From Macrostomum lignano (Eukaryota): a DNA stretch of 64,000 nt. Below the pieces are notes generated by a model, which saw only the letters and a list, made by a program, of their open reading frames with translations, did not search any database and was not told where the DNA came from. A program made the translations under genes and the position numbers. The stretch is taken from NCBI GenBank assembly GCA_002269645.1, contig NIVC01000312.1:124001-188000 (forward strand), given 5' to 3'. This document shows positions 2,068 through 64,000 of the stretch, piece after piece (position 1 is the stretch's first letter; each line of letters begins with the position of its first letter).

Positions 2068-2164
2068 ACATTATTCTGTATTCCAGTGCTTGATAAATTA
2101 ATATTTTTTATTGCGATAGTGACATTTCACTATCGAATCATCTGGTTGAAGGTCAGGGTTACAG

Positions 2165-41745: not shown

Positions 41746-44240
41746 CTGCAGCAGGAATTCATCCGACGCCACAGTCTCAGCAGCCAGCTGCGAGAAGATG
41801 AGGCCAGTGCAGGCCAAAACCAGTCCAACGGGCTGTCCGGTGACATCAGCCAGAAGGCCGGCCAGCTCCCGCAGACAGTTGCTAGGCCGTTGCTGGGCAG
41901 GCAGCAGGGCGGCTGCGCAGACAATAGGAGCCACGGTATGCAGGCAGAGCAGCCGACGCCGCCTTAGGCAATGGCCGTCAAGATTGGCTAATTGGCTGTC
42001 ATCGGCCCTGTACAGCAGGTCGCAGCGCCTGTAGCAGAAATTGATAATCCTGCGAAGCTGATCGAAAATCGACTGTCCGACAGTTAAAAATGCAAACCGG
42101 CGGCCCAGCTCGGCCAGATGATAGGCGGCTACCTCGACTGCGCAGTCGAAATTTAACGAATATTTCAGAGCGGCGAAGGCCAGTTGCTCTGTCTCCACGT
42201 ATTGGCGCCTCGCAGCCCGGCGGCTGTGCCCTGCCAGCGGCGGCACCCCCAGCAAGTCCAGCAAGTCGACAGCGTCGGTTTTGCCGAATAGAATTCGAGA
42301 AGCGCGCAGTTTCATGGCCAGCGAAAACGCCACGGTCAGCACTGTGAGCGGGAATTTGCGCCGGACAGACTGGAAAGTTATTAAGAAAAATATGAAGCTT
42401 TTTATTATTTCATTTAAGCTGACCTACTAGCGGTAGTAAAGTTTGCAAACGCTTAGAAATTCGATAAAAATACTTTACGACAAGACCATCTTAAGGTTGC
42501 TTATACCATTGTAATTGAATTCTCAAAGTAGTTTATGGCAGATTCTTTAAGGTAGTTCGGTGAGGCTCTGCAACCATGCAAACCATAACCCTAACTTAAA
42601 AACCATAACCCCAACCAAAAAACCATAAGCCAAAACAAAAACTATAGCCCTAACCTAAATAACCATAACACTAACCTAAAAACTAACACTCCTAACCTAA
42701 AAACCGAAACCTTTAACCCAAAAACCATAACGCTAACCTAAAATCATTATCCTAACCTAAATCCGAAACTTCTAACCTAAAAACTTAAACTCTTACTAAA
42801 AACCATAACCCTAACCTAAAAACCATAACCCTAACCTAAAAACCATAACCCTAACCTAAAAACCATAACCCTAACCTAAAAACCATAACCCTAACCTAAA
42901 AACCATAACCCTAACCTAAAAACCATAACCCTAACCTAAAAACTAACACTCCTAACCTAAAAACCGAAACCTTTAACCCAAAAACCATAACGCTAACCTA
43001 AAATCATTATCCTAACCTAAATCCGAAACTTCTAACCTAAAAACTTAAACTCTTACTAAAAACCATAACCCTAACCTAAAAACCATAACCCTAACCTAAA
43101 AACCATAACCCTAACCTAAAAACCATAACCCTAACCTAAAAACCATAACCCTAACCTAAAAACCATAACCCTAACCTAAAAACCATAACCCTAACCTAAA
43201 AACCATAACCCTAACCTAAAAACCATAACCCTAACCTAAAAACCATAACCCTAACCTAAAAACCATAACCCTAACCTAAAAACCATAACCCTAACCTAAA
43301 AACCATAACCCTAACCTAAAAACCATAACCCTAACCTAAAAACCATAACCCTAACCTAAAAACCATAACCCTAACCTAAAAACCATAACCCTAACCTAAA
43401 AACCATAACCCTAACCTAAAAACCATAACCCCAACCTAAAAACCATAACCCCAACCTAAAAACCATAACCCTAACCTAAAAACCATAACCCTAACCTAAA
43501 AACCATAACCCTAACCTAAAAACCATAACCCTAACCTAAAAACCATAACCCCAACCAAAAAACCATAAGCCAAAACAAAAACTATAGCCCTAACCTAAAT
43601 AACCATAACACTAACCTAAAAACTAACACTCCTAACCTAAAAACCGAAACCTTTAACCCAAAAACCATAACGCTAACCTAAAATCATTATCCTAACCTAA
43701 ATCCGAAACTTCTAACCTAAAAACTTAAACTCTTACTAAAAACCATAACCCCAACCTAAAAACCATAACCCCAACCTAAAAACCATAACCCCAACCTAAA
43801 AACCATAACCCCAACCTAAAAACCATAACCCCAACCTAAAAACCACAACCCTAACCTAAACCAGAAGATAGTTTCACCTGGCTACTCCGCCGGAACGGGA
43901 AGCGATTCCCCCACTCCACGCAGATCCAGTACCGCAGCAGCCGGCAGAAGATTTCCACAGCTAGCCTGGCAACACCGCCGGACAGTCTCAGCAGGCGACA
44001 GATCGTGAACAGCAGACGAGCTGATTCGGCGATAGTCTGCTGAAGCCGGGCATCCAGCCGGCCGCAGCGGATTAAATAAACATTTAGCGACCGATCCCGG
44101 GGACGACAAACTCCTGTGGCCAGCTGGGGAAACCGACGACCAGTGATGTCGATAAGACCCGGCGGCAGCCAGGGAGGCGGGCGAGAAGTCGGCAGCTGGA
44201 GAAGATAGCAAGCTATCGACATACGGATTATGCCGTGCAC
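41743..44240 (-). CDS. CNTD1: Cyclin N-terminal domain protein, CNTD1/COSA-1-like (exons about 44240-43878 and 42369-41743; start codon uncertain)
   Basis: LLFTICRLLRLSGGVARLAVEIFCRLL, RKFPLTVLTVAFSLAMKL, ETEQLAFAALKYSLN and LADVTGQPVG follow the motif order I recall for CNTD1 (YQAVEILERF, NKFTLRLVSCVQLASKL, ESELDVLKSLNF, LQSITG). Phase-0 intron. Confidence 0.68.
42585..43860. repeat. 20-bp telomere-like minisatellite AACCATAACCCTAACCTAAA in the CNTD1-like intron
   Basis: Contains CCCTAA in most units. A degenerate block recurs at about 42.6, 42.94 and 43.55 kb. Confidence 0.95.
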
Positions 44241-45290: not shown

Positions 45291-46069
45291 ATATCAGATA
45301 GGTGGCACCTGAGTAACTTTACAGGAAAAGGATGCCGCATAGGCTAGAACCAGTAAACATAAGTATAAAGCAACACGCAAAAGAATACATGAGTAAAAGT
45401 GCCCACAAACTGCGGGACACAATCAGCTTGAATGTATTTCAGCTTGAACAGAATAAAACTTTTTTCATTGAAATTTTTAGAACCAGTAGTAATGATCAAA
45501 AGAAAAAATTCAGATTTCAGCTGATATATTAATTATGCGACTAGAATACATACTTATTACAGCTAAATATGGATCCTTAATGCCATAAATAATAATACAC
45601 AATAAAGAACTCTGCAAGCATGACATCAGCACATCCCGAATTGGAAGAAATACTTTACAGAGATTAAATAAACAGCATAAACAGTTATATCTGTTATATC
45701 TAAATACAAATCTATGTATTCTAGTTCTAACAAGATCAAATAAAGGTCGTTAGTCCGGTTATCGACTGGGAACACAGGGGTCAGATACTGACAAAAGGCC
45801 TGCCAACTTAAGCTCATAAAGTAGAGTCCCTAATTATCCCCTTGCTTATTCTTCCCTATCCAAAGTACAACTTTCGTCACTTTCTCCACTTTGAGCTTTA
45901 TTTGACAGGCCCTTTATTAACGTAAAAGGGTGTGTCCGTTAGGGGTCAGTTCAAGGTCACAGAGGTCAACTGAAGGTCAAAAGAATGTGTCATTTACTTT
46001 CGTTAAGTCAATGTAATTAACACACGAGGTCATAACCGGACCACCCAAGGTCGCACAGTGCCGAATCTA

Positions 46070-46400
46070 GGTCACACGGGGGTCACGTAGGGACAATTAC
46101 CCCAAGGTCACACGGGGGTCACGTAGGGAAAATTACCCCAAGGTCACACGGGGTCACGTAGGGACAATTACCCTAAAGTCACACGGGGGTCACGTAGGGA
46201 CAATTACCCAAAGGTCACACGGGGTCACGTAGGGACAATTACTCCAAGGTCACACGGGGGTCACGTAGGGACAATTATCCCAAGGTCACACGGGGGTCAC
46301 GTAGGGACGACTACCCCAGGTTCACACGGGGTCACGTGGGGACAATTACCCCAAGGTCACATGGGGTCACATAGGGACAATTATGATCGAAAGGGTCTTA
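46070..46400. repeat. 35/36-bp minisatellite GGGGTCACGTAGGGACAATTACCCCAAGGTCACAC 3' of KCTD3
   Basis: Directly visible. Confidence 0.92.
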
Positions 46401-46488: not shown

Positions 46489-49400
46489 TCAGGTGTCCGG
46501 CAGGCCGCTAGACACGCTGCTAGACGGCGTCAGGTGGCAGCTCTCCAACAGGCTGACTAATTCGCGCGGCGTCGGCCCGCCGACGTGACCGGAGAAGCCG
46601 CTGCCGGAGCAACCGCCGCCGGAAGCGGTCGCGGCGATTGTTGCAGCAGCCGCCGTAGCCGCGGTCACGTGACGTTGGGTGGCAACGCCAGCCGAAGCCC
46701 CGGACAAAAGGCAGCTGGGCGGTCGGGCGCCGGCGTCGGAGTTCGGCGGCAGCTGCTCCAACGCGGTGGTCAGATCCCACATCTGCAGACTGCCGTTGGC
46801 GTGGCCGGTGATGAGGTAGCGCCGCGGCCGGGATCCCAGTCGCGAGCTGCAGCCCTCGTATTCGTGAGTGGCAAAGGCGGTGATTGCCGAGCCGTCAACA
46901 GAACGGATTGTGCAGACTCGACGGCCGTTCGGTGCCAGCCGGATGAAGAGGGAACTGGCAGCTGGGAGCACCTGAGATTGGGAGGCGGGTGGGGATAGGG
47001 ATAGCCTCATGGGATACGGAACCAATGGGATATGGAACCAATGGGATACGGAACCAATGGGATACGGAACTAATGGGACACGGAACCAATAGGATACGGA
47101 ACCAATGGAATACGGAACCAATGGGATACGGAACCAATGGGATACGGAACCAATAGGATACGGAACCAATGGGATACGGAACCAATGGGATACGGAACCA
47201 ATGGGATACGGAACCAATGGGATACGGAATCAATGGGATACGGAACCAATAGGATACGGAACAAATGGAATACGGAACCAATGGGATACGGAACCAATGG
47301 GATACGGAATCAATGGGATACGGAACCAATGGGATACGGAACCAATGGGATACGGAATCGATAAAGCCAATCTAAAGAAATCGCACCTGTTGCACAAAGA
47401 TCTGCAGATCGTCTTTTTCGCCGTGCGGCCCCGGATGCCGACCGGGCGAGCAGCTGAAGTGCAACACGTGAAAGCTAGCTAGTGGCGTACTGCCGGGCTG
47501 GGTGCTGATCATGCCGCGAAATCGGGTCACCTGCCAGCTGCGCACGTGACCCAACTCTGAGCAGACGCTGATCAGATGCCGCTCGGATAAGCTGACATGC
47601 TCCACTGGCCGGCGATGAACGCTGAATGTCTGGAATAGCTGAGGCGCGTGACCCGGCGTCTCCGGGTGCTGTACTATGACGCGTACGAGGCCGCTGGCTG
47701 TGCCGTAGGCAATCTCTAGCCATTTGCCGCCAGATAGGGATGTCTTGGGAGTCAGGTAGACGCTGAGCGAGGTGACAGCCTCTTGGCTGGGGTCGCGGTA
47801 TAGTTCTGTCACTAGCAGGTCGTTGTCTTTCAGTCGCATCTAGTTAAAAATAGGTCATTGGTAGATAGAAACAGGAGTGAGTGGGCTGAGTAATCGGGCA
47901 TACTTCAAAGTCGCCAGGGGTCAAAGTCTGGAGAAACATCTAAAGTCACACGGGTCATTGGGTCAAGTAGAGATAAGCCTCCAGCGCCACGCGTGGTTAC
48001 TTCGGGACAAATCTGAAGGTCACGCGGGGTCACTTCGGGACGAATCTGAAGGTCACTCGGAGCCACTTCGGGACGAACATGAAGGTCACTCGGGGCCACT
48101 TCGGGACGAACATGAAGGTCACGCGGGGTCATTTCGGGACGAATCTGAAGGTCACTCGGGGCCACTTCGGGACGAACATGATGGTCACGCGGGGTCACTT
48201 CGGGATGAATCTAAAGGTCACTCGGGGTCAGCTCGGGACGAATCTGAAGGTCACTCGGGGTTACTTCGGGACGAATCTAAAGGTCACTCGAGGTCATTTC
48301 GGGACGAATCTGAAGGTCACTCGGGGTTACTTCGGGACAAAAGGTCACAGTGGTCACGTAGGGCCAGAGCCGCCAGACTCAAGGTCACGCATAGTCACTG
48401 AATTAAAAAACAGTGGGGAATGTGTGAGAGAAACATGCGACTTACAGGCAGTTTCTCCATGTCAATATGACAGATTTGGCCATTGGCGCAGCCTAGCAAC
48501 AAAAACTCGCTACCGGCAACGTCCAGACTGGTTACTGGGGCGCCAATCGCTTGCAATTGCCAGCTGCCTGTGGCGTGGTGCAACACACCAAGTGCACCGG
48601 CTCGCCTGGGTGATGTTGTTCGTGAGGTTCACCATTATAGCCAAGGAAAAACTCTCAAGTACAAAGGAGACTGAATGTCTTAAAAGCATTAAAAAAACGA
48701 AGAGACAAACAATGGTGACTAAGTTTATACCTCAACAATTTAGTGCCTCCCCAGTGGGGGGGCAAGATTGCTAGTCTAATATACTAAAAAATTTCTTAAA
48801 CAAAGTCCAACTTGTAAAACCCCATCGGAGCAAAGATACGTAGGTAATAAAAATAATCGATTTTGAAGCTAGGAAATTGTCAATCTAGTGTTTAACAGCT
48901 CACCTGCTGACAGCTACCAGCTGGTTGCTAACAAACAGCAGGTCATCAACTGGACCGGGGCTTTTCAATTCTCTAGGCGGTGCGGCGCTAACTGCGGCGA
49001 CGGGGGCAGCGGCAGGGTCGGAGCCCGAACCCGTCGTCGTGTCGTCGACGCCGCCACTGCCAACGCCGCCGCCTGCCGCCGTCTCGGGCACGGCGAACAG
49101 CAGGACGCGATGATCGCCGCCGGAGCTAGCCACGCCCAGCAGGCGGTGATCTCGGGCGCTGGCCCCACTGAGACGGCCGCTGAGAGCTAGTCGGTGCACG
49201 CGGTCAGGAAAAGCGCCCGTCTGACTCTGCCACACCGGCTGCCAACCGGCCGCCTCCTTTAACCGGTACAGACGGACAGCGTCGTGGGTGGCCACGGCTA
49301 GCCAGGACTGCTGGCAGCGGATCAGGGTCACCTGCCGGCCAGTGGCAGAAGGAAGTGGAACTTATCAAAGGGCCAATGAGAAGGAAGCCGGAATCGGAAC

Positions 49401-50010
49401 TTATCAAAGGGCCAGTGAGAAGAAGAAGAAGGAAGCGGAACTTATCAAAGGGCCAGTGAGAAGAAGAAGGAAGTGGAACTTATCAAAAAGTCAGTTAGTG
49501 CAGACAAATGTTACTGATAAAAGATGCAATGAAGCTACACACCTCCTGTCCATCAATAGCGCTGATGTGGGCATGAAAATAGACACTGCCGCAGGCGCCA
49601 TAGTAGGCCTCCTCACAGAGGCTCAGCTTCCTAGACAGGCATGTGACTCCATAGAATTCGGCTTCATTTTTCAGTGCCAACCAATCGACATTATCGCTGC
49701 TAGGCAGGTCCCTGGTGCGCAGGTAGTTAAGGATCAGGGAGAATAGCTTGGGATCGCGATCGATAAAGATGGCACCAGTCTCGTCTCGCTGAGTGTCTAG
49801 ACTGCCATTGAGCAAAGCTCGAAAAAATGTGTCTGGGATAGATAACAGAGTCTGCTGCGATGTTGAGAACCTGTTAAGTAAGAATATTGCATTGTCATCA
49901 TATTTCTACAAAAATTAGTAGAAAAAATACTACAAGTTTTAATTTTAATTAGCTTACCTTTTCCCACCAACATTAAAGTTGATTATATCTGATTTAATGC
50001 TATTTGGCAT
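46489..50010 (-). CDS. KCTD3: BTB/POZ plus WD40-repeat protein KCTD3/SHKBP1, 6 exons (50010-49958, 49870-49543, 49331-48904, 48605-48446, 47839-47387, 46971-46489), about 634 aa
   Basis: [99 protein letters not shown]. All junctions are in phase. Confidence 0.95.
47010..47360. repeat. 16-bp minisatellite ATGGGATACGGAACCA in KCTD3 intron 5
   Basis: Directly visible. Confidence 0.96.
47985..48400. repeat. 33-bp minisatellite GAAGGTCACTCGGGGYCACTTCGGGACGAATCT in KCTD3 intron 4
   Basis: The 11-aa periodicity [11 protein letters not shown] equals 33 bp. Confidence 0.94.
49350..49490. repeat. Repeat of about 35-40 bp (GGAACTTATCAAAGGGCCAGTGAG core, 4 copies) in KCTD3 intron 2
   Basis: Directly visible. 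Confidence 0.85.
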
Positions 50011-50544
50011 AACAATCTTTGATCTAAAATGTTAAAAAAATATCAATTTAAACTAATACCTTATTTATATTGGACTAAAAAGATCTATATATTATTCAAG
50101 AATAAAGAATAAGGCCCAAGTTATTAATTATATCTAGAATTCTATTATAATCATAACTATAGCTAGCTACAGCTATAAAATGCTAAGTGATTAAATAAAA
50201 TAGGTAGCTATACAAATAGCCTATTTGAAAAAATTATAGAGATTAAAATATTTTACCAATACCTAGTGACTTAAGAAAATAGAAACAATCAAAATTCTAG
50301 TAAAATTTGTCAGAATTAATAAGACAAGCTAAAATGCAACCTGCTCTACTTTATATTGGTATAAAAAGAAAGTTAAATACTTTGTACACAAGATTTTTCT
50401 TTAATTATCTGCAGGGCCCCTCTCAATTTCTTTATAAAATAGTCACCGTTTAGTTAATTTGAATTCACGCCAAAACTAAGAAACATATTTTGTTTTAATA
50501 CTCATATTTTCTATAATATTTTGCGCTAACGAATTTTTGTTTAA

Positions 50545-51088
50545 AACTGTAGCAAATTTTAGTATAAATAGAAGCGATTTCAGTGGAGGAGAAGACAACC
50601 TTGCGCATTGCAGTTCACTAACAAAATAGTTGATAACGAATAGTAAGAGTTCCAAGAAAATAAGAATTGAAGAAGTGCTTTCTGTGTTGATTCTTTTTAA
50701 GAAGTGAGAGTGAAATAGACTGAAGAGTATACAGTACTTACATACTATTGAGAAGCAGCAGTATTGAGTAGTAAGAGAATACGAAGCAGATCTGAAGTGA
50801 TACGTGTAAGAATAACCGGAGGCTGTGATCCTCTGATCTTGGTAACGCCCAAGGACTTGCAAAGTACATGGAATACATATACCAGTATAGCCAATAGACC
50901 ACTCAGGCCAAAAGTACAGTGAACACTACTGGAATCAGAATAAACGCTACCAGAATAACAGAGGAGTAAAATCTTTTAGGGCTAATAGTTTTCTAAGAAT
51001 AATACTCAGACTAAATACTCAGACTAAATACGCAGACTAAATTCTCAGACTTATTCTAAAATTAATAAACTCATAATTTATTAATACA
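50545..51088 (+). mobile_element. Possible LTR (left boundary uncertain), ending AATAAA...TAATACA just before a PBS-like TGGTGGCAGC
   Basis: TATAAATA at 50563, TCAGT at 50580, a 13-bp repeat CTCAGACTAAATA x4 at about 51005-51055, AATAAA at 51064, CA at 51087-88 and TGGTGGCAGC at 51096. No partner LTR found in the window. Confidence 0.45.
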
Positions 51089-51412
51089 ATAGTCTTGGTG
51101 GCAGCTACCAACATTTATAAACAGGAGTTTAGCCCTTTGACAACTTAAGTGACAGCTGTGGAATCATTTGTAGGGACAGAAGTTATCCCTAGCACAATTT
51201 TGGTTGCAGCGGTGGGATAATTCTAGAGAGCTAAAAGGCCTGTAACAACTTGGTGTCAGCAGTTGAGATTTAAATAGAGAGAAAAAGAACCACTGTGACA
51301 ACTAGGTGGCATTTAGTGGGATTAAAATTGATAAAGATAGAAGAATACCCATTGCTACAACTTTGGTGTCAGAAGTGGGATCTCATATCGTATAGGAAAA
51401 CCCACTATTACA
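51082..51412 (+). other. Array of six LTR-end/tRNA-Leu PBS-like units with variable spacers
   Basis: PBS-like motifs start at 51096, 51147, 51201, 51251, 51304 and 51364, each preceded by ..ACA plus 3-7 nt. The motif at 51364 is TGGTGTCAGAAGTGGGAT, the complement of the tRNA-Leu(CAA) 3' 18-mer as I recall it. Confidence 0.85.
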
Positions 51413-51539
51413 ATTACATTAGAAATATTTTTTATTTTGGCTATATGTGGCCCTTAAAACCTTTCTATCTAGCCCTTGGGTCCTCTAAAACTTTACAATG
51501 GCAATCTGGCTTACTCAAGGTTTGTCAATTGTGTATCTA

Positions 51540-51745: not shown

Positions 51746-52195
51746 CTCATATAAGTTCTAAGCTTTCTATAAAATTCTTTAATAGCCTAGAAGGGTGGCT
51801 ATCTCTTTCACAACTAGGTAAGCATATAGGCTATGGCTAGAGAGGCCAATGACTGCTCTAATTTTTAGGTAAGGATTAACAAATAATAGTCTATAAGAAA
51901 AAATAATAATATATTTATAATAAAAGTCCTACTACTATAACTTTTAGTAACAATAGGCCTAAAACAGGTTTAGAGACTAGCTAAATAACATCAATAATAG
52001 TAAAGGCCTAGTAGGCCTATTATTATAGTATTTTGCAATATAGGCTAAGTTATAATTAAATAGGCCTATAAAGAGCTTTTCAATTCTTTGCAAATGTTTT
52101 TTTTCTTTTATTTATCATAGTTTTTCTTAGGCCTATCTTATTCATTTTATTATTTTGTATTATTCCTTAATATTTTTTATGATATAATATATATT

Positions 52196-52628
52196 GGCGA
52201 TTTTCCTCTTTCGTTCGTTAAATTATTTTTTCGACAGAAACAAGTTGTGACTACTGAGTAATGTCAGAAAACGACAGTAATGGGATGCTGGGACTTAAAT
52301 TTTTCTCGGACAGTTGGATGGAGTTGTTTAACTAAAGACAAACGGTAATGGTAAACGACATGTAACGACAGTAAACAACAACAATAGCTCATGCGAGAGT
52401 GGGAAGGGGAGCAAGGAGCGAGTGCAAGCTGCTGCCTATACTCTGCCATGAACCGAGTAGGTGAGTAGTGCCATAGACATGTGTCAGCAGCAACCCCATG
52501 TCCTTTCCACTACTGCCACATCATTTTTTCAATAGGCATAATTTCAAATGCTGCCACGTCACTTTTTCGCGTCTACGCACCGATTCAAATTGAAAAAATA
52601 ATTTAACGAACGAAAGAGGAAAATCGCC
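52196..52628. mobile_element. MITE of about 433 bp with 37-bp perfect TIRs, in a TA-rich site (Tc1/mariner-like or unclassified)
   Basis: GGCGATTTTCCTCTTTCGTTCGTTAAATTATTTTTTC (52196-52232) is the reverse complement of 52592-52628. Both flanks are ATATAT-like. Confidence 0.88.
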
Positions 52629-53225
52629 TATATATTTCTAGGCTACTCTAAGCAACCTAAAATAATTACTAACTTACTAATACTAGGCTCTAATATAAGG
52701 TAGGCCTAGCATTGAAAATTCAAAGATAGGCTTTATCTCTTATTAATTGGCTCAAACAGTAAAAGGCATCTTGACATCTTTGCATATTTTTTAAGATTGC
52801 ATAGGGCCTAATATAAATAGGGCCTAGGCTTAAGAATAAGAACGAGCTAGTCTGATTGCCTGCTTTAACATAAAATAAACACTACATAAATACGTCATAC
52901 ATAGCTCAGGAATACTGAAGAGATAGCCAAATAAGCGTGGCTAAGTTTGCTAATCAGCTGTAATGTTTAGTCCACTTTGCTTTAATTGATGCCTTGTATA
53001 AACTATTTGAGTTGCAGTTTCAGAATTCAGTTTCAGTTTAGCATAAAATAATGCGCAGCATGCAAACAGCTCCCGCCTGGCGGCGCGAAAGATGGATACA
53101 CGATATTTAACGATACTGCAGTTACTTAAATTGCTGCCAAATGTAGCATCGTCGATAAATCTTATTTAATCGTTTTAAATCTTAAAATGCAACAATAACT
53201 TTTCAAAAAAAACAAAAAAGAAGTT

Positions 53226-53487
53226 GAGGCTCTTCACGGCAATCGATTCCAGAACCAGAATCGGTTCGGATTTCCAAGAAAAAAAGCAGTATAACTTTTT
53301 AACTTTGTTGAATGTTTGACTGCCTTAACAGCCTCACTCTGCACAATTTTTCACTTTCTTCTTGGCTATTGCCATCCAATAATCACAATTTTAAAGCACT
53401 AAAATCCCTCTAGTTTAGGAGACAAAAAGTTATACTTTACAAATTGGTTCTGGTTCTAGAACCAGAACAAGCAATATGAAGAGCCTC
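53226..53487. mobile_element. MITE copy 1 (about 262 bp, TIR GAGGCTCTTCA), PIF/Harbinger-like
   Basis: Terminal inverted repeat plus subterminal CCAGAACCAGAA/TTCTGGTTCT; homologous to copy 2 along its length. Confidence 0.8.
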
Positions 53488-53490
53488 AAT

Positions 53491-53750
53491 GGGCCTTTTC
53501 ATATTACCAATTCCAGAACCAGAATCGGCTCGGAATTCCAAGAAAAACAGCAGTATAACTATTAAACTCTGTTAATATTTGACTGCACTGACAACCTAAC
53601 TTGGCACAATTTTTCACTTTCTCCTTGGCGATTGTCATTCAATAATAAAAACTTTATAGCACGTATCTCCCTCTAGTTATGGAGACAAAAAGTTATACTT
53701 CACAAATTGGTTCTGGTTCTGGAACCAGAGCAAGCAAAATGAAAAGGCCC
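53491..53750. mobile_element. MITE copy 2 (260 bp, 12-bp TIR GGGCCTTTTCAT, 3-bp TSD AAT), PIF/Harbinger-like
   Basis: AAT|GGGCC...GGCCC|AAT. GGGCC-initiated TIRs and a 3-bp TSD are typical of PIF/Harbinger. Confidence 0.85.
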
Positions 53751-53879
53751 AATGGTGCAGTATAAACCGAATGCGTTTTATGTATAGGCTCTTACGTATG
53801 GGTTCATTTTTTAAAAACTTAAATTAATTTCAGCTGATAAATTTAAGCTAGGTATATATAGCTCCTATTTACTAGGGCC

Positions 53880-55290
53880 TATATGCAAGCAGCATGGATC
53901 TTTCTATTATTGGCCACGTAGAGGGGAAGCCCCTTGCGCGCACGCGCTCGCAGAACAACAGGTGGGAGGGACAGGCAGCAGCAGCCTGAGGGGTCCGCGC
54001 AAGCGCTTGCAAGTCAGCGATGAGGCAGTCCGTTAGAGTGGCAGTGCGCGGGCCTGGCCGCGGCGCAATTGCTCGGTCGGCTGGTGCAGCAGCAGGGCCT
54101 GCAGGGCCAGAGGGACGGGCACACCGCGGCCCAGGGTCCGTAGGCATGTGGCCCAACAGCATCTGACGGTGCCGGCGCAGGGTGGCGCTCTGGGGCGGAG
54201 TTCCACCCGGCCATCAGAGCGTTAGTCGACAGGCGCTCCGGGTAGTGCACGCCCAGCGCGTAGCACAGCGGCGATCGGTAGAGCGCGTCCAAGGGCTCGC
54301 TCTCGCGTCTCGGTCAGCGGCACAGGAGGACCGTACGGCCGCGCGGAACAGACACACCTTCAGGTCATCTGTCAAAGACAATCGCATCTCGTTTCATCAC
54401 CAGGGCGCCAAGGTACGGAGTCCTCGCACACCGCGATGCCGTCTCCATTGGCAGCGTGAGAGTTAGATCGGTATTTGTCCCTACATGCAGCGCCTCCGTC
54501 TTGCGAGCGTTCACACAGCAGCCCAACAGGGGCACCCTCGTCGCAAAGCCTCGTCGCAAAGCCTTGCGCGCTGGCGCTGGGAAGTGCTGGATCGTGGCAG
54601 AGCAGCACGCGATGTCGACAGCATACAGTACGTACGAGCCTGGGCTTCCTACCAGTCATCTAGTTGATATAGCTCTCCAGGCAACACTATGGCAGTGGCG
54701 AGTAGGATTTCGCTCACAGCCTCTTTCGATGATCACTTCAGTCCGCTGGGCGTAGATGCGCTGCAGCTCGTCCCTGGCAGCACTGGCCTGGTCGCTGTGA
54801 TGGCCGTGGAGTGCAGCAGTGCTCTGCACATGTCGCCTTGCCTGGGAGACGATGAGATCCGCGCCGGTCCTGCAGGGCCTTCAAATGGTTTTCCTGTCTC
54901 CGTGGGAGAAGCGCTGCAGCATCCTCGACGGCGTGATGGAGAGACTCGAGGACTCTCCATACAGATCAAAGTCGCATGCCACCTCCAGGCGGTGATCAGA
55001 TTGAACGCAGTCGGGGCGGATGTTGAGGACTCTGCGCACCCTGGACCGAGCAGTTGGGCAGAGAATCCAGTCCAGCCGAGTGGCTCGCCCGCCCGTTGGG
55101 GCCAAAAGAAAGTTGGAAGCTTGCTGAAACGTTGTCGCATGGTGCCATTGACAGCCATCAGATCTCTATAGCTGGCCTCGATAAAACTGGATAGGAAAGG
55201 TGAGTTGGCATTGGGGATGCCACAGCTGTTCTTCACAAGGCGGCCGTCGGCTGGCAATCGCGAGTAATGTATAGCAAAATATACCAAAAT
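53880..55290 (-). mobile_element. Degenerate, internally deleted RTE-clade non-LTR retrotransposon (endonuclease C-terminal half plus RT remnants)
   Basis: PNANSPFLSSF, TRLDWIL..SDHRL (APE motifs), VNARKTE, YLG, LKVCLFRAAV, spread across frameshifted ORFs. Confidence 0.8.
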
Positions 55291-56365
55291 AATGTAGAGT
55301 GTCTTTGGCTTTATCTATTTATAAACCTATTTCTATCGATAAGTGCCTTTTTACTCTATCTATTGATAAGCCTCTCACTGTTGGAGAGATTACTTTGAGT
55401 ACTTTCGTCCTTTATTTTTCAACGCACAATGGAACAGTCTCTCTCCGACATGAAGCGCGTTTTGATCTACCAGGATGATGTGTTGGTTTTTGCTGAAAAC
55501 TCTGACTCCTTGCGCAAGTGCTTGCGCGCCGTGAAAACTAGGCTAGCCGAGAAACACGTCACAATCATGAAGCCAAGTGCGTTGAGGAGACCGATGAAAT
55601 TTCTTTTCTGGGTTTCCAAATTTCCGCGGCCATACAACCGACTTGTGGAGAAAATCAGACGCATCGCGGTCCCAGTAGACAAAAAGGAGCTATAGAGCAT
55701 TTCCTTTGGCTTGGTAAATTTTTTCGGCAGGCTCATCCCCAACTTTGCCGGCAAAGCAAAGCCGCTGAACGAGCTACGGCGGGACAACGTCGCATTTGAG
55801 TGGACGGATGCCTGCAATCGAGCGTTTGAAGCACTTAAGCAAGAGTTCACGTCGCAGCCTGCGGTGCAGCCTTATTCCCTGGAGAAGGAGGTCACCATCA
55901 CAACTGACGCCCCCAAAGGTGCCCTTGCTGGTGTAGTGACTCAGAATGGCCACCCTGTAATCTGCATTTTCAGAAGCCTCTCTAAGTCCGAGCAGAATTA
56001 TTCAAACAACGAAAGGGAAGCGCTTGCTAGCCATCATCTGGGCAGTTAGACGACTGAGGCACTATTTACTTGGGAGGCAGTTCACGATCAACACTGAACA
56101 CATCCGCTCGAATTTCTCGGTGGCCATGAAAATGATGGAATTTGACTACCTCATCAACTACATACCTGGCAGAAATATTCCGCACGCAGATCCCTTATCT
56201 CGCTTGCGATTCGATTGTCAACCCACAGGATGTCTCTGACGCAATAAACTGCGTCGCATTCGAGTCCCCGATCATTGACCGCCACCGCATCCTATCAGAG
56301 TTAGAAATTGACACTTTCATTCAAAAAGTCATCAAGCTCGGGACACTGGCCTCAGTGTACACAAT

Positions 56366-57570
56366 GTAGAGATCTCCAAGCATAGTAGCCTACTAAAAGT
56401 AGCAAGATAAAAACATGAATACTATTTAAAACTAACATGCGTCATACTCTATTTTCAGTAATGCATGCAATATCACGTAAACAGCGAGTGATCGTTACAT
56501 AGTCCAAAAACCGGTTTTCAACCTAAATTTCCAAATATGGTAAAGGTCAAGTTAAATGCGATCTAGGCTTCACCCCTTTCTATGTAAAACCCCACCGGTC
56601 AAGAGACAAAGTCCATCTTTTGATTCTTATCAATAAAACCAGTTTGAAGCTCAAGGTCGAATGAAATCGTGTATAAATACAAGCAAAAATCCGAGCTGAA
56701 ACCTCAGACTCGGAGCAGCCTTAAGAGATCTTAGGCTTAGCCAGAGTTACTAAGCAAGGCTATATCTCTGAGAGAGACAAACACCAATTGGTAAGCCTTT
56801 GTTAGAGTCTTTGTTATTTGAAGTCTTTGTTATTCGATTATTGGGAGCTGTGTCATTGCCGGCCGTTACTGATAAGTCGATTTATTGAGTTATTGAATTT
56901 GAGGCCTCCCTATTCCTAAGGGATTGGATAGGATCTGCGGACCGATTCCGATACTCTTAGTCGATTACTGACTGATTGATTTTGGTACCCTAGAGTAACC
57001 GATAGGAGCAAACGACTCAGATTCCGTTATTTCTAGAAGAAGACGCCCTTTCGGAGGACCTCGTTATTGTTATAGAGTTGACTTTGTTATTAGGGCGCAT
57101 CTCTGCACTCGAGGAATATATTGATTTCTGCACTCGAGGAATATATCGATTTCTGCACTCGAGGAATATATTGGTTTCTGCACTCGAGGAATATACTGAC
57201 GTCGACGGACTAAGTTATTAAGCTCTCATATTCGGCCGATTCTATAATTCAAGAAGACTACTCCGGAGGAAGAATATTTGAAGAGACGAGCTCGGAGAAC
57301 CTGCTCGACAAAGAAGAGGAGCCCGCATCAGTAAGTGAACACTGAACTTGTTCCCAGGCTTGAGGTCTGGAAGTGGGAGTTCGTGCGTTTAGACACTAGA
57401 TTAATTTCTCTCTCTCTTCTCTTTCTCTCTCTCTCTTTCCCTCTCTCTCTCTCTCTCTAGTGTGCTAAAGCGAACTCTTCAACAAGCCGAAATGCCGTTC
57501 AAAAAAGTGACTGACTCTGACGGTAGAAGATGGCTTGCTGTTCAAGGTTTTCATTTCAGTCTGTTGTACT
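56366..57570 (+). mobile_element. Unidentified insertion inside the Gypsy pol (promoter-like region, 25-bp repeat x4, GT-AG intron, short ATG ORF)
   Basis: Gypsy homology stops at about 56365. TATAAATA at about 56673, TCTGCACTCGAGGAATATATTGATT repeats at about 57100-57200, donor gtaagt at about 57331, CT tract plus AG at about 57460, then MPFKKVTDSDGRRWLAVQGFHF. Confidence 0.4.
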
Positions 57571-57599
57571 CGTGACTCTCAGGAAGGGTGCACCTACGA

Positions 57600-58050
<451 letters not shown>

Positions 58051-59652
58051 GAGTGCGGCAAACCAAAACAACCACGGGCCGGCAGCCACCCGCCCCGGCC
58101 GCGCCTAAAAAGGCCACGACCCCCCCCCCGGGGCCGGGGGCTCCCCCCCCCGCCCCACCCCCCGCCCCCCCCGGCCCAGCCACCCACCGGCCAATCACGG
58201 CGCAGCTGGGGGAGGACAGCCCGGGAGGAGGGCCAAACAGGGCGGCCCAGCCAACCAGCGCGCAGACAACCCCAAAGGGCTAAGCGGCTAACACCGCTGA
58301 GCCTTTCACACCAAAAACAAATACGGAGCAGAGTGCACTTTAGCAGTGCAAGCGCACGGGCAAAAAAAACATAGTACAAAAACAAATACAGTATGCCGTG
58401 TGGGGGGCAGAGTGAACTTTGGCAGGGCAAGCGCACGGGCACAACAAGTCGCAAGGTTTTCATTCCTCCCAGACTTAGGAAAGAAGCTTTTATGGCAGCT
58501 CATGACACTCACTCAGGATATCTTGCTACGTACAATATCATAATCCTCTCATGCTGGTGGCCATACATGCGCTCAGACATTGAGCAGTTTGTTCACAGTT
58601 GTTCAGCCTGCTGCCTAAAATCAAGAGACAGCTGGCCATCTGCAGAATTCCCATTCCAAAAGCTACAGATGGATTGGGCTTTCGTTAAAGATGTTGGAAA
58701 TATTCTCATTGTAGTAGATTCGTTTTCCGGATGGATTGAGGCGATTCCGTTAAAGACAGATCCACCGAATGTATCATTCGCTCTCTGCATGCGTACTGTC
58801 TTTACGCGTTTTGTAGTGCCGGAGCTGCTAGTATGCCCCCAAATTTACCAGCGATTCTTCTGGCTAAAGATTAGTGGAATAAAAAACCTTGAATCCCCAA
58901 ACTGTCAAAAGTTAAAACTGTGAAACGGGGATTGGACTTGGACCGAACTTGGACCGATTCGGTCCAAAGCTTGGACCTAAAGGATTACTGATGTCGATTT
59001 TGTTCCTTTCCTGCAGCGTGTGCTGTTCCACCAAAGAATATCGTCGCTCCACCGAGGGCGAAGCCCGGCAGAACTCGTGTTTCGTTGTCGGCTCCGTGTT
59101 CCGGTGGAGTCAACGTTCGATCAGGGCGAAAAGGTTGCCTACAGACCAACATCTGACGCCTCAACATCAACCGCATAGTTTCTAATGCTCAAAGGCAGCA
59201 ATACGTCCCGGATTCTGGACAATGACTCTACGCTAGGCCTCTCATGCAGGCGCAAACTTGCCCTGATAGCCGCTAGTGCTGGAGAATTCTGATGACGAGA
59301 GCCTGAATCAGCCACACGATGCACCTGCCAATCAAGCAATTCCAACCCCTGATGGCAGTCCTGGGCCACAAGAGCAAGCTTCTGCGATTGAGGACAGTCC
59401 TGGTGGTACACGCAAAGGCACTCACACTCGACGCCCACCTAAACGATACACTCCGTGACAGCAAAATACCACTGTTGATTATCCTACCATCAACAATCAA
59501 TACGAACTCAGTGTTTGCAGTTTTGACAATATTTCTGTTGATTGCTCCGTTGTGTGCGCCGTGAAATCTACTGCATAAATGTTGCTCTAATATCTATTGC
59601 TTCCATGCAGCTTCCATGCAATTTACAGTATGCCTTTTTCTCAAGGAGGACA

Positions 59653-59874
59653 TGTTAGTGTGTGTTCAAGCCCAAGCATTCTACTATATGCATTCTGTTG
59701 TATTCTACGCTCGTATGTTCCAAATCCCGCGTTGCCAAAGTCCACTTGCTGTAATACCAGCTTCCCCTCGGTTTCAAATAAAAAGCTTTTGCCTGGCTAC
59801 GATGATTAGCCATCTGCGAATAATATACATGAATTAAGTTTCCTGCACAACCAATGCATTCTACGGTCACAACA
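59653..59874 (+). mobile_element. 3' LTR of the Gypsy element (about 222 bp, TGTT...AACA)
   Basis: Purine tract AAGGAGGA just upstream, TGTTAG start, AATAAA inside, ACAACA end. Confidence 0.7.
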
Positions 59875-60717
59875 GGTTCCTTGTGTATATGTCTTAAAAT
59901 CGAGATTATTACCAAAAAGTACTATTTTGATTTCGTATTGAAATCCCACACATTTTTTGTGATTTTGTACTAGCTTGGAGACTTCACTTTCTGCCTTAAA
60001 TATATGCGAATAACATACTTTGCTTTTATTTAATTAAGCAACCCAGTCTTTAGATAACTATTAAAAAGTAAAATATAGTAAAGAAACACTAGATAAAAAG
60101 TTTGTTGATATGTTGATATGTGCTAGGGAGGGCTTCTCTGTTGCGTAAATAATCACACCGCTGTTACCAAGTTGTCGTAGGGGAATTTTAATATTTCCTA
60201 TATACTTATCCCACTGCGCAACCAAGCTGTCCCAGGGTGTTTCGCAAACTTTGCTTATTCAGTTCATTTGTTAGGCAGACAGTCTCGAACCAAAACGGTC
60301 GCCTCTCAATGCGCAGAATTCACTTCTAATTTATACTATAACCGAGGAAGGGCGCATTTAAACAAAGGTTAGAAAACGTGGTCACTAAAAAACGGCGGGA
60401 ATTTAAAATGACCCCTCTCTCAGATATAAATTGTACATTAGAGTGACAGCAAAATACAGCATAAAGACACTGATATACAGCAAAAAAATTCTGAGTTACT
60501 TAGCTCGTACTAGATTCATACTTTTAATTGAGAAATACTAAACTTGTGCTCTTTCTATGCAGTCGATTCTTTTTTAATTAATTTAACTAATGAAGTCCGC
60601 ATTACGTACTTTATCCAGGTAACGTTTCGCGTCGTAAAGTGTTTGTTCTCAAAAAAGATCATAAGAAAATTTTGTTGATATATTCATTCATTGCAACGTA
60701 TCAAAGACTCGCGAATA

Positions 60718-62482
60718 TCACTTTCTGACATGAAATAGTGCCGTCAGTGGTGATGGCCCGCCGGTTCGTTTAAACACTCGAACATCGTTTTGTCGCTTGC
60801 CGAACCTGAAGCAGTTCTGAAGCAAAACGTTTAAATTTGAATTGTCATCCACACTGATGGAAGCCGTCGGCAAAGTGTCATTCACGAACATTCCCCACGA
60901 GTCAGTTGTTGGAGTCGATGTGAAGCCGATGTTCACCCACTCGTTGGCGTTCGAAGTCAGCGCAGTTGTAGAAGTTTGATAACGTGTGGGAGCGGCACCA
61001 GCTTCGGTTTTGAACACAACATAGGGTGTAGAAGGAATGTCGTACGAGCCCTCCCAGATACGGTGGTAGAATGGTCCGGTTTCGAAGTCAGAGCAGTTTA
61101 GAAAATCGAAGAAGATCTGCACCTGCGGCTGTCGCTTCATCCTGAGCAGCACCGTGACGCCTGTGCCGAACCCGATGTCGCTCTTGTTCATGGCCAGAAA
61201 CGAGCTGCTCCCATCGAACGCGGCGCCCTCCTCTGTCCACTGGACTCCGACCGGATAAATTCGGTTGGTCTCTTCGTCAGCCTGGCACACGACATTCTCA
61301 AATGCAGACATGTCGTCTCCGAGCCACACGTTTGTGAGCTTCGGGTTGAGCTGAGCCGGATATTTGATCGGAAATCGGATGAGCACTCGGCAGTCGCTGC
61401 TCGCACCGCCAGAGACAAGGTCGCGACACACGGACTGGTAGCACTGCAGCATGCAGGCGACCGATGCGATTCCATCCGGCATTCTCGTTGCCCAGTTCGA
61501 GCCGGCCTCTCTCCGCTGCAGTCTCTTCCGCTACCAGTCCGTGTGTCGCGACCTTGTCTCTGGCGGTGCGAGCAGCGACTGCCGAGTGCTCATCCGATTT
61601 CCGATCAAATATCCGGCTGTCTTTCCTGGCAAAGGAGGCGTGTCTCAGGCGCTCAGATGGGAACCTGATGTCCAGCAGCGCTCTGGATGCGGCGGGCGAG
61701 AGCAGGAAGCCGATGCCTCTGGGGAGTGGCTGGGGCAGCCTTGAACTATCAGCTTAGGCTCAGATCCACAGTCTCTTCAGAGTTCTGCCGCCGATGTTCC
61801 AGGATGGAGATGTTGAGGTCGGCCTTGTCAGCTCCTGCTATCTCCATGTCTGACTGAGAGTGCGGGCATTGAAGGTGGCGACTTGTCTATTTCTTGGCTC
61901 TGCTTGTGCGTGCATTGCGGGTGGGGAGTTGGGTGGAAGCACTGGCCCTCGAGGCTCCGGTTGAGCGACGGCCGGAGGTGAGCAACGTACTAAACTCCGA
62001 CGCAAGGCTTGAAAATTAAATAGCCAGCTGAAAATTAACTATGAGTGTGTGCCTGCGTACAGTATTATTTCACGTTTGTATGGCTCTCATCTCCGGGAAG
62101 CAGCATGGCTAACTAATATTGTTTTACTGTACACATGTACATTTCGTTTCGTAATGGCCACGTATATGATCAGGATTTGGTATTAAAGGCTTAAAATTGT
62201 CCTTGCCGATTCAGACTACAGTACTTTTATTATCGTATTTAGTTAGCAATGTAAACACAGAAGAGTGTAATCTAATGCTTTTCCGTCAGAATTATGCGCA
62301 GTGCTTCTCAAATCGTCTAAGTGTGCCTCGTGCAGTGCTCAAGGCATTAACTGTATATTATATAGCGGTGCAAGCGTGCCAACGCAGAGGCTCACATTCT
62401 TGCCACTAGCTGAGCTAGGAAAAAGAGAGTACATTAATGTTAAGAAGCAGGGGTAGATTGTGCATTTGAGCAAAAAAGCCAT
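60718..62482 (-). CDS. Putative secreted PAN-like plus LamG/concanavalin-fold protein (main exon 61515-60718; candidate signal-peptide exon 62482-62396); may be a pseudogene
   Basis: SVACMLQCYQSVC..SDCRV is PAN-like Cys spacing. AFDGSSSFL, VTVLLRMK, NEWVNIGFT and MFVND are LamG-like strands. Exon 1 MAFLLKCTIYPCFLTLMYSLFPSSASGKN|gtgagc is phase 0, but the acceptor ctgcag lacks a pyrimidine tract. Confidence 0.55.
61354..61618. repeat. Perfect 89-bp inverted repeat (61354-61442 / 61530-61618) with an 87-nt spacer
   Basis: The arms read as exact reverse complements. ACTGCAGC/GCTGCAGT extends the stem inside the loop. Confidence 0.95.
61620..61990 (-). mobile_element. 5' fragment of an RTE-clade LINE (endonuclease N-terminus), decayed
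   Basis: VATFNARTLSQTW, ILEHRR and GIGFLLSPAASRALLDIRFPSERL motifs with stops and frameshifts. Confidence 0.75.
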
Positions 62483-62649
62483 TTGGTTTCCAGTACTCAT
62501 AGCTATAATATACCTGTCACCTTTTGCTGCAGTTGCTAAGGTGAAAAGACAGCCATAGACAGACAGACTGAGAAGCAGCACAAAAGAAAGAGAATTCAGG
62601 CCGAAAGGAGCAGATAAAGCAAGAGCTGGTTATTTCGCAGCAGCCCACT

Positions 62650-63450: not shown

Positions 63451-64000
63451 AATTCGAGTTATCTTGGCCATTAGTTATAAAGAATTTGGAAAAACTTAAT
63501 AGAAACACGAATATGTTGTACATGACCGAAAATCGAAATAAAACCTTTTCACGCTAGCTCGTTAACTTTACTAAAGTTTATTTTTAACCATCAAAGACCA
63601 ACATTTTCGTAAGCCAAATGACAGCATATGGTTTGATCTCAAAATTCCGAAAACGTTATTAATACGCATGCATCTGATTCTACTATAAATGTATCAACAG
63701 TGTAATTAGTTGGTGTAGCTATCGCTATATACGGTGTAGCTCAACTCTAAGGACACCCTTGGTGGCAAGCTAACTGTTGAAGATTGGGCGTCAACCAACA
63801 ACAAAAAAGTAGTATCGTACAATATTAATGATAAAAATTGATTACACCTGCATTCCTAATGGGCAGATGTGCAACCGACAGCTCAGTCGCAGCTATTGGG
63901 CGGCGCATCTGAAGGCTGCATACGGCTGTTCAGTCCAAGGACTGGGGGGTCGCCACACACACCCTCAATTACCCCAGCTAATGCTGGTACCCATTTTACA

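What the first reader, a model, noticed from the sequence alone, without database searches (positions are those of the whole stretch)
51082..51412. CRISPR-like array of LTR-end / tRNA-Leu primer-binding-site junctions with distinct spacers
Seen in the sequence: six units at 50-60-bp spacing. U1 taataca-atagtct-TGGTGGCAGCtacc (51096); U2 ccctttgaca-actt-AAGTGACAGCTGTGGAAT (51147); U3 ccctagcaca-attt-TGGTTGCAGCGGTGGGAT (51201); U4 cctgtaaca-act-TGGTGTCAGCAGTTGAGAT (51251); U5 ccactgtgaca-act-AGGTGGCATTTAGTGGGAT (51304); U6 cccattgctaca-actt-TGGTGTCAGAAGTGGGAT (51364). A terminal half-unit cccactattaca follows. The units are separated by different 19-25 nt purine-rich spacers. Established knowledge: TGGTGTCAGAAGTGGGAT and TGGTGGCAGCGGTGGGAT are the complements of metazoan tRNA-Leu(CAA) and tRNA-Leu(AAG) 3' ends and serve as PBSs in Ty3/Gypsy elements. 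U6 matches 18/18 and U3 17/18 against my recalled sequences. LTRs end in ..ACA a few nt before a normally single PBS. Inference: the array could be (a) serially captured U5-PBS junctions from different retrotransposon families, (b) a multi-key non-autonomous element able to use several Leu isoacceptors or helper families, or (c) a decoy or sponge for tRNA primers or 3' tRNA fragments. It differs from every other repeat in the window because the tRNA-complementary part is conserved while the rest varies. A simpler explanation is an old, diverged 54-bp tandem duplication of one leader; spacers 3 and 4 share TAGAGAG..AAAAG.
Basis: partly seen in the sequence, partly recalled or inferred. Interest (0 to 1): 0.93.

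Follow-up and report, generated by a model that had tools for sequence, protein, structure and literature searches.

The report
Decayed tandem array of tRNA-Leu primer sites
A flatworm (Macrostomum lignano) intergenic region holds an old, decayed six-unit tandem repeat whose conserved core is the tRNA-Leu primer-binding site of an LTR retrotransposon, so it looks like a retroelement fossil with an unusual multi-primer-site layout, not a CRISPR-like system.

Summary
Positions 51082-51416 hold six units of 51-59 bp plus a half unit. Each unit is a CCC..ACA arm, 3-4 nt, an 18-19-nt tRNA-Leu-complementary motif and an A/G-rich spacer. U6 matches the mouse tRNA-Leu(CAA) 3' end plus CCA at 18/18. 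U3 matches tRNA-Leu(AAG) at 17/18. The host is Macrostomum lignano, where LTR retrotransposons make up 21% and tandem repeats 15% of the genome.

New findings:
- A second 2.5-unit array of the same unit type lies at 60119-60237 on the minus strand.
- The whole 34-nt core is better conserved than the spacers (78% against 54% agreement with consensus), not the tRNA-complementary part alone.
- The spacers still share a purine motif, so they do not look like captured foreign sequences.
- Two isoacceptor types in one array are very unlikely under drift (about 1e-4).

No LTR pair, gag, tRNA gene or known RNA family is attached, and a unit-hairpin idea failed shuffle tests.

Best reading: a fossil of a tandemly reiterated primer-site/leader module from a tRNA-Leu-primed LTR retrotransposon, now inert. 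The CRISPR-like, capture and decoy readings are unsupported but not excluded. The rest of the host genome could not be searched.

The parts
51082..51416 (+). Array A: six units (arm, linker, tRNA-Leu-complementary 18-19-mer, purine-rich spacer) plus a terminal arm and linker
   Evidence: Read directly. Unit segmentation checked against the sequence. Single-query scan. Profile scan E-values 4e-11 to 5e-7.
51096..51113 (+). U1 PBS-like motif TGGTGGCAGCTACCAACA; only the first 10 nt match Leu(AAG)
   Evidence: 12/18.
51147..51164 (+). U2 PBS-like motif AAGTGACAGCTGTGGAAT (13/18 to Leu-AAG)
51201..51218 (+). U3 PBS-like motif TGGTTGCAGCGGTGGGAT (17/18 to the tRNA-Leu(AAG) complement)
51251..51269 (+). 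U4 PBS-like motif TGGTGTCAGCAGTTGAGAT (16/18 to Leu-CAA, with a 1-nt insertion)
51304..51322 (+). U5 PBS-like motif AGGTGGCATTTAGTGGGAT (14/18)
51364..51381 (+). U6 PBS-like motif TGGTGTCAGAAGTGGGAT; exact complement of the tRNA-Leu(CAA) 3' end plus CCA
   Evidence: 18/18.
51401..51412 (+). Terminal half unit: arm CCCACTATTACA with no PBS after it
60119..60237 (-). Array B: V1 (CCCTGGGACA GCT TGGTTGCGCAGTGGGAT + spacer), V2 (CCCCTACGACA ACT TGGTAACAGCGGTGTGAT + spacer) and a V3 arm ending in CCCTAGCACA, which is identical to the U3 arm
   Evidence: Profile hits E=3e-5 and 0.03, or 2e-6 and 3e-4 with the core profile. Sequence. Inverted-repeat pairs I16-I18.
55429..56239 (+). Degenerate Ty3/gypsy RT (C-terminal part) and RNase H fragments. 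They are a neighbour and are not shown to belong to array A.
   Evidence: Pfam RVT_1, RT_RNaseH_2 and RT_RNaseH. No gag, protease or RT N-terminus upstream.
58393..58923 (+). Degenerate integrase fragment (H2C2 zinc domain plus part of rve)
49495..50013 (-). First two coding exons of a KCTD3/SHKBP1-like host gene. Array A lies 1.1-1.4 kb upstream of its start codon.
   Evidence: BTB_2 domain. [17 protein letters not shown] exon. Homologues named KCTD3/SHKBP1.

Best explanation
Array A, and the smaller array B, are fossils of a tandemly reiterated primer-binding-site/leader module from a tRNA-Leu-primed LTR retrotransposon of Macrostomum lignano. A segment of about 54 bp spanning the ..ACA/linker/PBS junction and about 20 nt of purine-rich leader was duplicated head to tail. 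I infer that this happened while the sequence belonged to a replicating element.

In such an element, any PBS copy that a tRNA primes from is rewritten from that tRNA during plus-strand strong-stop synthesis. This is established retroviral biology. It would explain why one array holds both a tRNA-Leu(CAA)-type copy (U6) and tRNA-Leu(AAG)-type copies (U3, U1, V2), and why the junction core stayed more constant than the spacer.

The copies in this window have since lost their LTRs and coding region and are decaying neutrally. They have no demonstrated present function.

Shown here: the array, the tRNA complementarity, the second array, the difference between core and spacer, and the absence of LTRs and gag-pol. 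Inferred: origin inside an active element and re-templating by tRNA primers.
For: - Each unit carries ..ACA, 3-4 nt, then a TGG-starting 18-mer. U6 is 18/18 and U3 17/18 to published tRNA-Leu(CAA) and tRNA-Leu(AAG) complements.
- Complementarity stops at 18 nt, the length copied from a primer tRNA. No tRNA cloverleaf or Rfam family is present.
- Real LTR elements with a single Leu PBS show the same junction...GCACA AAAT TGGTGGCAGCGGTGGGAT in four WLWD01 copies with gag-PR-IN-RT-RH, and ...ACA(ACAT) TGGTGTCAGAAGTGGGAT in IMG/VR contigs.
- Flatworm Saci2-like Ty3/gypsy families and insect errantiviruses use tRNA-Leu primers, and PBS substitutions change the primer used (PMC12471100, PMC13524379).
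- LTR retrotransposons make up 21% and tandem repeats 15% of this genome, and the window is packed with minisatellites.
- A second array of the same unit type, with unrelated flanks, shows the multi-unit module existed in more than one copy.
- The core agrees with its consensus at 78% against 54% for the spacers (Fisher p=1.7e-5).
- Drift from one isoacceptor type to an exact copy of the other has a probability of about 1e-5 per unit, or about 1e-4 for eight units.
- Mismatch counts of 0, 1, 2-3, 4, 5 and 6-7 out of 18 across U6 to U1 fit neutral decay of copies that once matched.
Against: - No LTR was identified upstream of either array. No direct repeat pairs with the flanks within the window or 9 kb beyond it.
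- There is no gag or protease. The nearest pol fragments are 4 kb away, 5'-truncated, and separated from array A by AT-rich non-coding DNA and a GC-rich insert.
- The flanks of A and B are not detectably alike, so a common parent element is not shown.
- Host tRNA-Leu genes could not be fetched, so the match is to mouse tRNAs.
- No other genomic copies could be examined, so 'family trait' rests on two arrays in one window.
- The cells in the core-versus-spacer test are not independent, and low-complexity spacers may simply mutate faster.
- I found no published precedent for a tandem multi-PBS leader. A scan of viral contigs for two Leu PBSs 20-50 nt apart found none.
Confidence: 0.55

Rival explanations
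1. An ordinary in-place minisatellite. A single retroelement leader with one PBS, left in host DNA, was amplified to about six copies by replication slippage or unequal exchange, as dozens of other short segments in this genome were. It then drifted neutrally. The resemblance to two isoacceptors and the better-kept core are by-products of chance, composition and how the units were picked out.
For: - The window holds more than 25 independent minisatellites, and 15% of the genome is tandem repeat.
- All units and spacers can be traced to one ~54-mer sharing a purine block.
- No element body is attached.
- The array shows a gradient of decay.
Against: - An exact 18/18 Leu(CAA) copy beside copies carrying the three Leu(AAG)-specific bases has a probability of about 1e-4 under drift.
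- The core is significantly better kept than the spacer on the same unit tree.
- A second array with different flanks exists 8.7 kb away in inverted orientation.
- The other minisatellites in the window are 80-97% homogeneous, unlike this array.
Confidence: 0.25
2. A working multi-PBS module, following the reader's options (b) and (c). Either it is the leader of a non-autonomous retroelement that several tRNA-Leu isoacceptors can prime, or it is a transcribed decoy that soaks up tRNA-Leu primers or 18-22-nt 3' tRNA fragments.
For: - Several tRNA-Leu-complementary sites sit in one 330-bp stretch, and one is still perfect.
- The core is conserved above the spacer.
- The unit type is found twice.
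- The Drosophila gypsy genome is known to bind its primer tRNA at two sites (PMC1635307).
Against: - Only 1 of 8 sites is intact and 3 have five or more mismatches.
- There are no LTRs and no PPT/LTR partner.
- Array B is absent from the only paralogous stretch that could be fetched.
- The array RNA has no predicted structure beyond shuffles (z = -0.42).
- No expression data are available.
Confidence: 0.08
3. A cluster of protein-binding sites, for an enhancer or insulator, built from a repeated 34-bp core with AT-rich spacers. It would resemble the Su(Hw) site cluster just downstream of the PBS in Drosophila gypsy. The core happens to derive from a PBS.
For: - The architecture is a conserved core with variable A/T-rich spacers at a period of about 54 bp.
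- It sits 1.1-1.4 kb upstream of a host gene's start codon.
- The comparison with the gypsy insulator is from my own knowledge.
Against: - There is no evidence for any binding factor.
- The best-kept positions are exactly those that match tRNA-Leu, including the TGG for CCA. A PBS origin explains this without a protein.
- The units are heavily decayed.
Confidence: 0.05

Closest known systems
Primer-binding site at the 5' LTR/leader junction of tRNA-primed LTR retrotransposons (Ty3/gypsy; flatworm Saci2-like families use tRNA-Leu(AAG))
   Same: An 18-nt complement of a tRNA 3' end including CCA, placed 3-4 nt after a ..ACA terminus and followed by a non-coding leader. The tRNA-Leu isoacceptors are the same ones used by known metazoan elements.
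   Different: Known elements carry one PBS. Here 6 copies (array A) and 2 copies (array B) are reiterated every ~54 bp, with two isoacceptor types. No LTR, gag-pol or PPT is attached.
Tandem repeats and satellites born inside LTR retrotransposons (leader or UTR tandem arrays) and host minisatellites
   Same: Head-to-tail copies of a short retroelement segment in a genome rich in such arrays.
   Different: The repeated segment includes the PBS itself. Divergence is uneven, with the core at 78% against the spacer at 54%. The other arrays in the window are homogeneous.
Two primer tRNA-Lys binding sites of Drosophila gypsy (PMC1635307)
   Same: A Ty3/gypsy genome with more than one site that anneals the primer tRNA.
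   Different: In gypsy the two sites are at opposite genome ends and only the 5' site is needed. Here the sites are tandem and adjacent.
CRISPR arrays
   Same: A superficial layout of a repeated core alternating with less similar spacers of about 20 nt.
   Different: The host is a eukaryote. The repeats agree only 72-78%, the spacers are related to each other and of low complexity, and there are no cas genes and no leader.

Membership tests
LTR-retrotransposon primer-binding site | At least 11-18 nt complementary to the 3' end (with CCA) of a host tRNA | tested here: met
   U6 is 18/18 and U3 17/18 to mouse tRNA-Leu(CAA)/(AAG) probe sequences. Host tRNA genes could not be fetched, so identity with the M. 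lignano tRNAs is inferred.
LTR-retrotransposon primer-binding site | Lies 0-5 nt downstream of a 5' LTR that ends in ..CA | tested here: inconclusive
   Every unit has ..ACA plus 3-4 nt before TGG, as in real elements. No LTR could be delimited upstream.
LTR retrotransposon (whole element) | Two direct LTRs flanking the element | tested here: not met
   No direct repeat involving the flanks of array A or B within 44-64 kb of the window or 9 kb beyond it.
LTR retrotransposon (whole element) | gag-pol reading frames downstream of the PBS | tested here: not met
   No coding signal in 51.4-53.9 kb. Only 5'-truncated RT, RNase H and integrase fragments occur from 55.4 kb onward.
CRISPR array | Near-identical direct repeats, unique spacers of foreign origin, cas genes, prokaryotic host | tested here: not met
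   Repeat identity is 0.70-0.73 pairwise. The spacers share a purine motif. The host is Macrostomum lignano.
Simple minisatellite | Head-to-tail units of constant period with uniform divergence | tested here: inconclusive
   The period of 51-59 bp is real. TRF does not call the array, and divergence is uneven between core and spacer.
tRNA gene, tRNA pseudogene or tRNA-derived SINE | Cloverleaf structure or a match to the tRNA covariance model | tested here: not met
   ARAGORN finds none. Rfam finds none, even at E<=10 across the region. Similarity stops at the 18 nt of the 3' end.
Foldback or terminal-inverted-repeat transposon with repetitive ends | Inverted ends that are homologous beyond the repeat units | tested here: not met
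   Arrays A and B are in inverted orientation, but neither their inner nor their outer flanks align above shuffled controls. No terminal inverted repeats were found.

The most novel reading that the evidence does not exclude
M. lignano carries a dispersed family of multi-PBS modules: tandem tRNA-Leu primer sites of several isoacceptor types. The family is kept because it works. It would act either as a leader that lets a non-autonomous retroelement be primed by whichever tRNA-Leu is available, or as a transcribed decoy that titrates primer tRNAs or 3' tRNA fragments and so modulates LTR-retrotransposon replication.
Probability: 0.08. Interest if true: 0.7.

Novelty: new variant of a known kind. 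Interest (0 to 1): 0.33.

Why it matters
If tandem multi-PBS leaders turn out to be a trait of an LTR-retrotransposon family, they would be a natural record of primer-tRNA switching between isoacceptors. Switching of this kind is known mainly from forced-evolution experiments with retroviruses. Such leaders would also show one route by which a retroelement segment seeds a satellite. As the evidence stands, the locus is a decayed fossil in a repeat-rich genome. Its main value is as a lead for a genome-wide survey, and it does not point to a new system.

Tried and rejected
- **Unit hairpin.** The arms look like partial reverse complements of the PBS core, that is, a sense copy of the tRNA 3' end. 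Per-unit folds have z-scores of +1.5 to -1.4 and the whole array -0.42, so the hairpin idea was dropped.
- **tRNA gene or SINE.** No ARAGORN or Rfam hit.
- **LTR pair or TRIM-like short LTRs.** None found.
- **Foldback or TIR element bounded by arrays A and B.** The flanks do not align above shuffles.
- **Unit-to-unit orthology between A and B.** Every register gives 56-60% identity, so it is ambiguous.
- **Link to the neighbouring gypsy pol.** The RNase H fragment has no close relatives in the protein collection. No gag or protease lies between the array and pol.
- **Host-gene route to a homeologous copy.** The KCTD3 exon found no M. lignano protein. Two contigs fetched through its homologues were from unrelated organisms.
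- **Paralogous locus L011.** It covers array B's neighbourhood but lacks array B, and it ends about 2.5 kb short of where array A's counterpart would be.
- **Other minisatellites with GTGTCAG-like units** (27816-28594, 14487-15079, 2161-3544). Profile scores are not significant.
- **Tandem Leu PBSs in IMG/VR contigs.** None found.
- **Literature on multiple or tandem PBSs.** Nothing relevant except the two-site case in gypsy.
- **Supplements of two papers for flatworm PBS and tRNA sequences.** Not held as text.

Full report
**Origin of the window.** A 266-aa ORF at 62650-63450 is encoded on GenBank contig NIVC01000312.1 of assembly GCA_002269645.1. NIVC00000000 is the Mlig_3_7 genome of the free-living flatworm Macrostomum lignano, and a paralogue of the ORF is named as an M. 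lignano protein. That genome is reported to be 21% LTR retrotransposons and 15% simple or tandem repeats, with large duplicated blocks. The window fits this description: Tandem Repeats Finder lists dozens of unrelated minisatellites.

**The observation.** There are six units of 51-59 bp. Each consists of an arm ending in ACA (CCCTTTGACA, CCCTAGCACA, CCTGTAACA, CCACTGTGACA, CCCATTGCTACA), a 3-4-nt linker (ACTT, ATTT or ACT), an 18-19-nt motif beginning with TGG or AGG, and a 19-25-nt spacer. A terminal arm CCCACTATTACA follows.

TRF does not report the array even at score 30, but the repeat is not an artefact of pattern-spotting. With the U6 core alone as a query, the four best of 12,790 windows on both strands are the neighbouring units U4, U3, U2 and U5. 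The degenerate 18-mer occurs four times at up to 3 mismatches against 0.5 expected. The spacers are 58-85% purine.

**tRNA complementarity.** Published mouse probes give the complement of tRNA-Leu(CAA) as TGGTGTCAGAAGTGGGAT... and of tRNA-Leu(AAG) as TGGTGGCAGCGGTGGGAT.... U6 equals the first at 18/18. U3 matches the second at 17/18. U4 is 16/18 to CAA, U5 14/18, U2 13/18, and U1 keeps only the first ten bases of the AAG type.

The similarity ends at 18 nt, which is the length a reverse transcriptase copies from its primer tRNA (established knowledge). No tRNA gene or other Rfam family is present in the region or in the window. An exact 18-mer match to a mouse tRNA can hardly be chance. I therefore infer that the M. 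lignano tRNA-Leu(CAA) 3' end is the same, but host tRNA genes could not be fetched.

**Comparison with real elements.** Collection scans recovered LTR retrotransposons with a single Leu PBS. Four near-identical WLWD01 copies read LTR...GCACA AAAT TGGTGGCAGCGGTGGGAT and encode gag-PR-IN-RT-RNase H. IMG/VR contigs carry ...ACA(ACAT) TGGTGTCAGAAGTGGGAT. The ACA, few-nt linker and TGG layout of each unit is therefore that of a genuine LTR-end/PBS junction. The literature confirms tRNA-Leu primers in flatworm Saci2-like elements and in insect errantiviruses, with PBS substitutions changing the primer used.

**A second array.** A profile built from U2-U6 finds two adjacent units on the minus strand at 60119-60237. 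V1 reads CCCTGGGACA GCT TGGTTGCGCAGTGGGAT. V2 reads CCCCTACGACA ACT TGGTAACAGCGGTGTGAT. A half unit follows whose arm ends in CCCTAGCACA, identical to the U3 arm.

Arrays A and B are 8.7 kb apart and inverted. Their inner and outer flanks do not align above shuffled controls, and no terminal inverted repeats bound them. Unit-to-unit orthology between them is ambiguous. The unit type therefore exists in at least two separate contexts.

**Pattern of conservation.** Mean pairwise identity is 0.73 for arms, 0.70 for linkers and 0.72 for the tRNA-complementary part. For spacers it is 0.59, which is at the shuffled level of 0.56. Agreement with the column consensus is 78% in the 34-nt core against 54% in the spacers (Fisher p=1.7e-5). 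The caveat is that the cells share one tree and low-complexity spacers may mutate faster.

So the whole junction core is better kept, not the PBS alone. The spacers are still recognisably related through TAGAGAG..AAAAG-type blocks. This argues against spacers captured from elsewhere.

**Two isoacceptor types.** The CAA and AAG complements differ at three positions. Most units (U1, U2, U3, V2) carry AAG-type bases there. U6 carries all three CAA-type bases and nothing else changed. Drift from one type to an exact copy of the other has a probability of about 1e-5 per unit, or about 1e-4 for eight units.

The ordinary retroviral mechanism offers a templated route. The PBS of the progeny is copied from the tRNA that primed, so priming by a near-cognate isoacceptor rewrites the site (established knowledge; inference here). 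This is my main reason to think the units were once used as PBSs in a replicating element, either after or during formation of the array.

**Surroundings.**
- There is no LTR pair around either array.
- Downstream of array A lie 2.4 kb of AT-rich DNA without reading frames. This stretch holds a 200-bp CT-rich tract, a 44-bp inverted repeat pair and a 263-bp duplication.
- Next comes a GC-rich insert (53.9-55.3 kb), followed by 5'-truncated Ty3/gypsy RT, RNase H and integrase fragments. The array is therefore not contiguous with a coding region.
- Array A lies 1.1-1.4 kb upstream of the start codon of a KCTD3/SHKBP1-like gene on the other strand.
- A paralogous locus (L011) matches 53894-55265 and 60702-64000 but not 55266-60701. 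It therefore lacks both the pol fragments and array B. It stops short of where array A's counterpart would be.

**Rejected ideas.** The arms resemble the reverse complement of the PBS core, which suggested a hairpin in each unit. Folding z-scores are between +1.5 and -1.4 per unit and -0.42 for the array, so I do not claim a structure. Weak resemblances of other minisatellite units to the PBS are not significant.

**Verdict.** The best explanation is a decayed fossil of a tandemly reiterated PBS/leader module from a tRNA-Leu-primed LTR retrotransposon (confidence 0.55). The main rival is a purely in-place minisatellite of a single leader (0.25). A present function as a multi-primer leader or tRNA/tRF decoy (0.08), or as a protein-binding cluster (0.05), is not excluded but has no support.

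It is not CRISPR-like in any mechanistic sense. A tandem multi-PBS layout with two isoacceptor types was not found in the literature searched or in viral contigs. I therefore rate it a new variant of a known kind, of modest interest. The decisive test is a genome-wide survey of M. lignano, which these tools could not run.

Noticed in passing
window 1-33000: More than 25 different minisatellites lie back to back. Units are 4-72 bp, arrays 0.3-1.9 kb, and copies 80-97% alike. The DNA between arrays is not repeated, so the density is extraordinary even for a repeat-rich genome.
   Followed up: partly
window 42580-43860: A 20-bp repeat, AAACCATAACCCTAACCTAA, occurs 64 times and contains the CCCTAA telomere-like motif. 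This is an interstitial telomere-like array.
   Followed up: no
window 47372-50013 (minus strand): KCTD3/SHKBP1-like host gene, with start codon near 50013 and a BTB exon at 49495-49815. Four minisatellites (16, 33, 36 and 39 bp) lie within or beside the gene span, at 46069-46383, 47009-47357, 47988-48338 and 49347-49487. The 36-bp and 33-bp arrays are about 70% alike.
   Followed up: partly
window 55429-59200 (plus strand): A 5'-truncated, frame-broken Ty3/gypsy pol (RT C-terminus, RNase H, integrase) is interrupted around 56.4-58.3 kb. No close relative was found in the protein collection.
   Followed up: partly
window 52189-52232 and 52592-52635: A 44-bp inverted repeat pair, 98% complementary and 359 bp apart, which is MITE-like or forms a long hairpin.
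   Followed up: no
window 53246-53755: A 263-bp tandem duplication (1.9 copies, 85% identity) containing internal palindromes such as TCTGGTTCTAGAACCAGA.
   Followed up: no
L011 (NIVC01001185.1:196013-216798) compared with window 53894-64000: The paralogous locus is 83-92% identical. It carries the block equivalent to 60702-61962 in several direct and inverted copies, and it lacks window 55266-60701.
   Followed up: partly
L005-L008 (WLWD01 contigs), about 60-90 nt upstream of the PBS: An active-looking LTR element with gag-PR-IN-RT-RH order has a stem-loop in U5, TGGTGGCAGC-N10-GCTGTCACCA. The stem is the first 10 nt of its own Leu(AAG) PBS and their near-complement. The M. lignano unit U1 also keeps exactly TGGTGGCAGC.
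   Followed up: no
window 34707-35221: A 72-bp repeat occurs 7.2 times (94% identity) and is open in reading frames on both strands.
   Followed up: no
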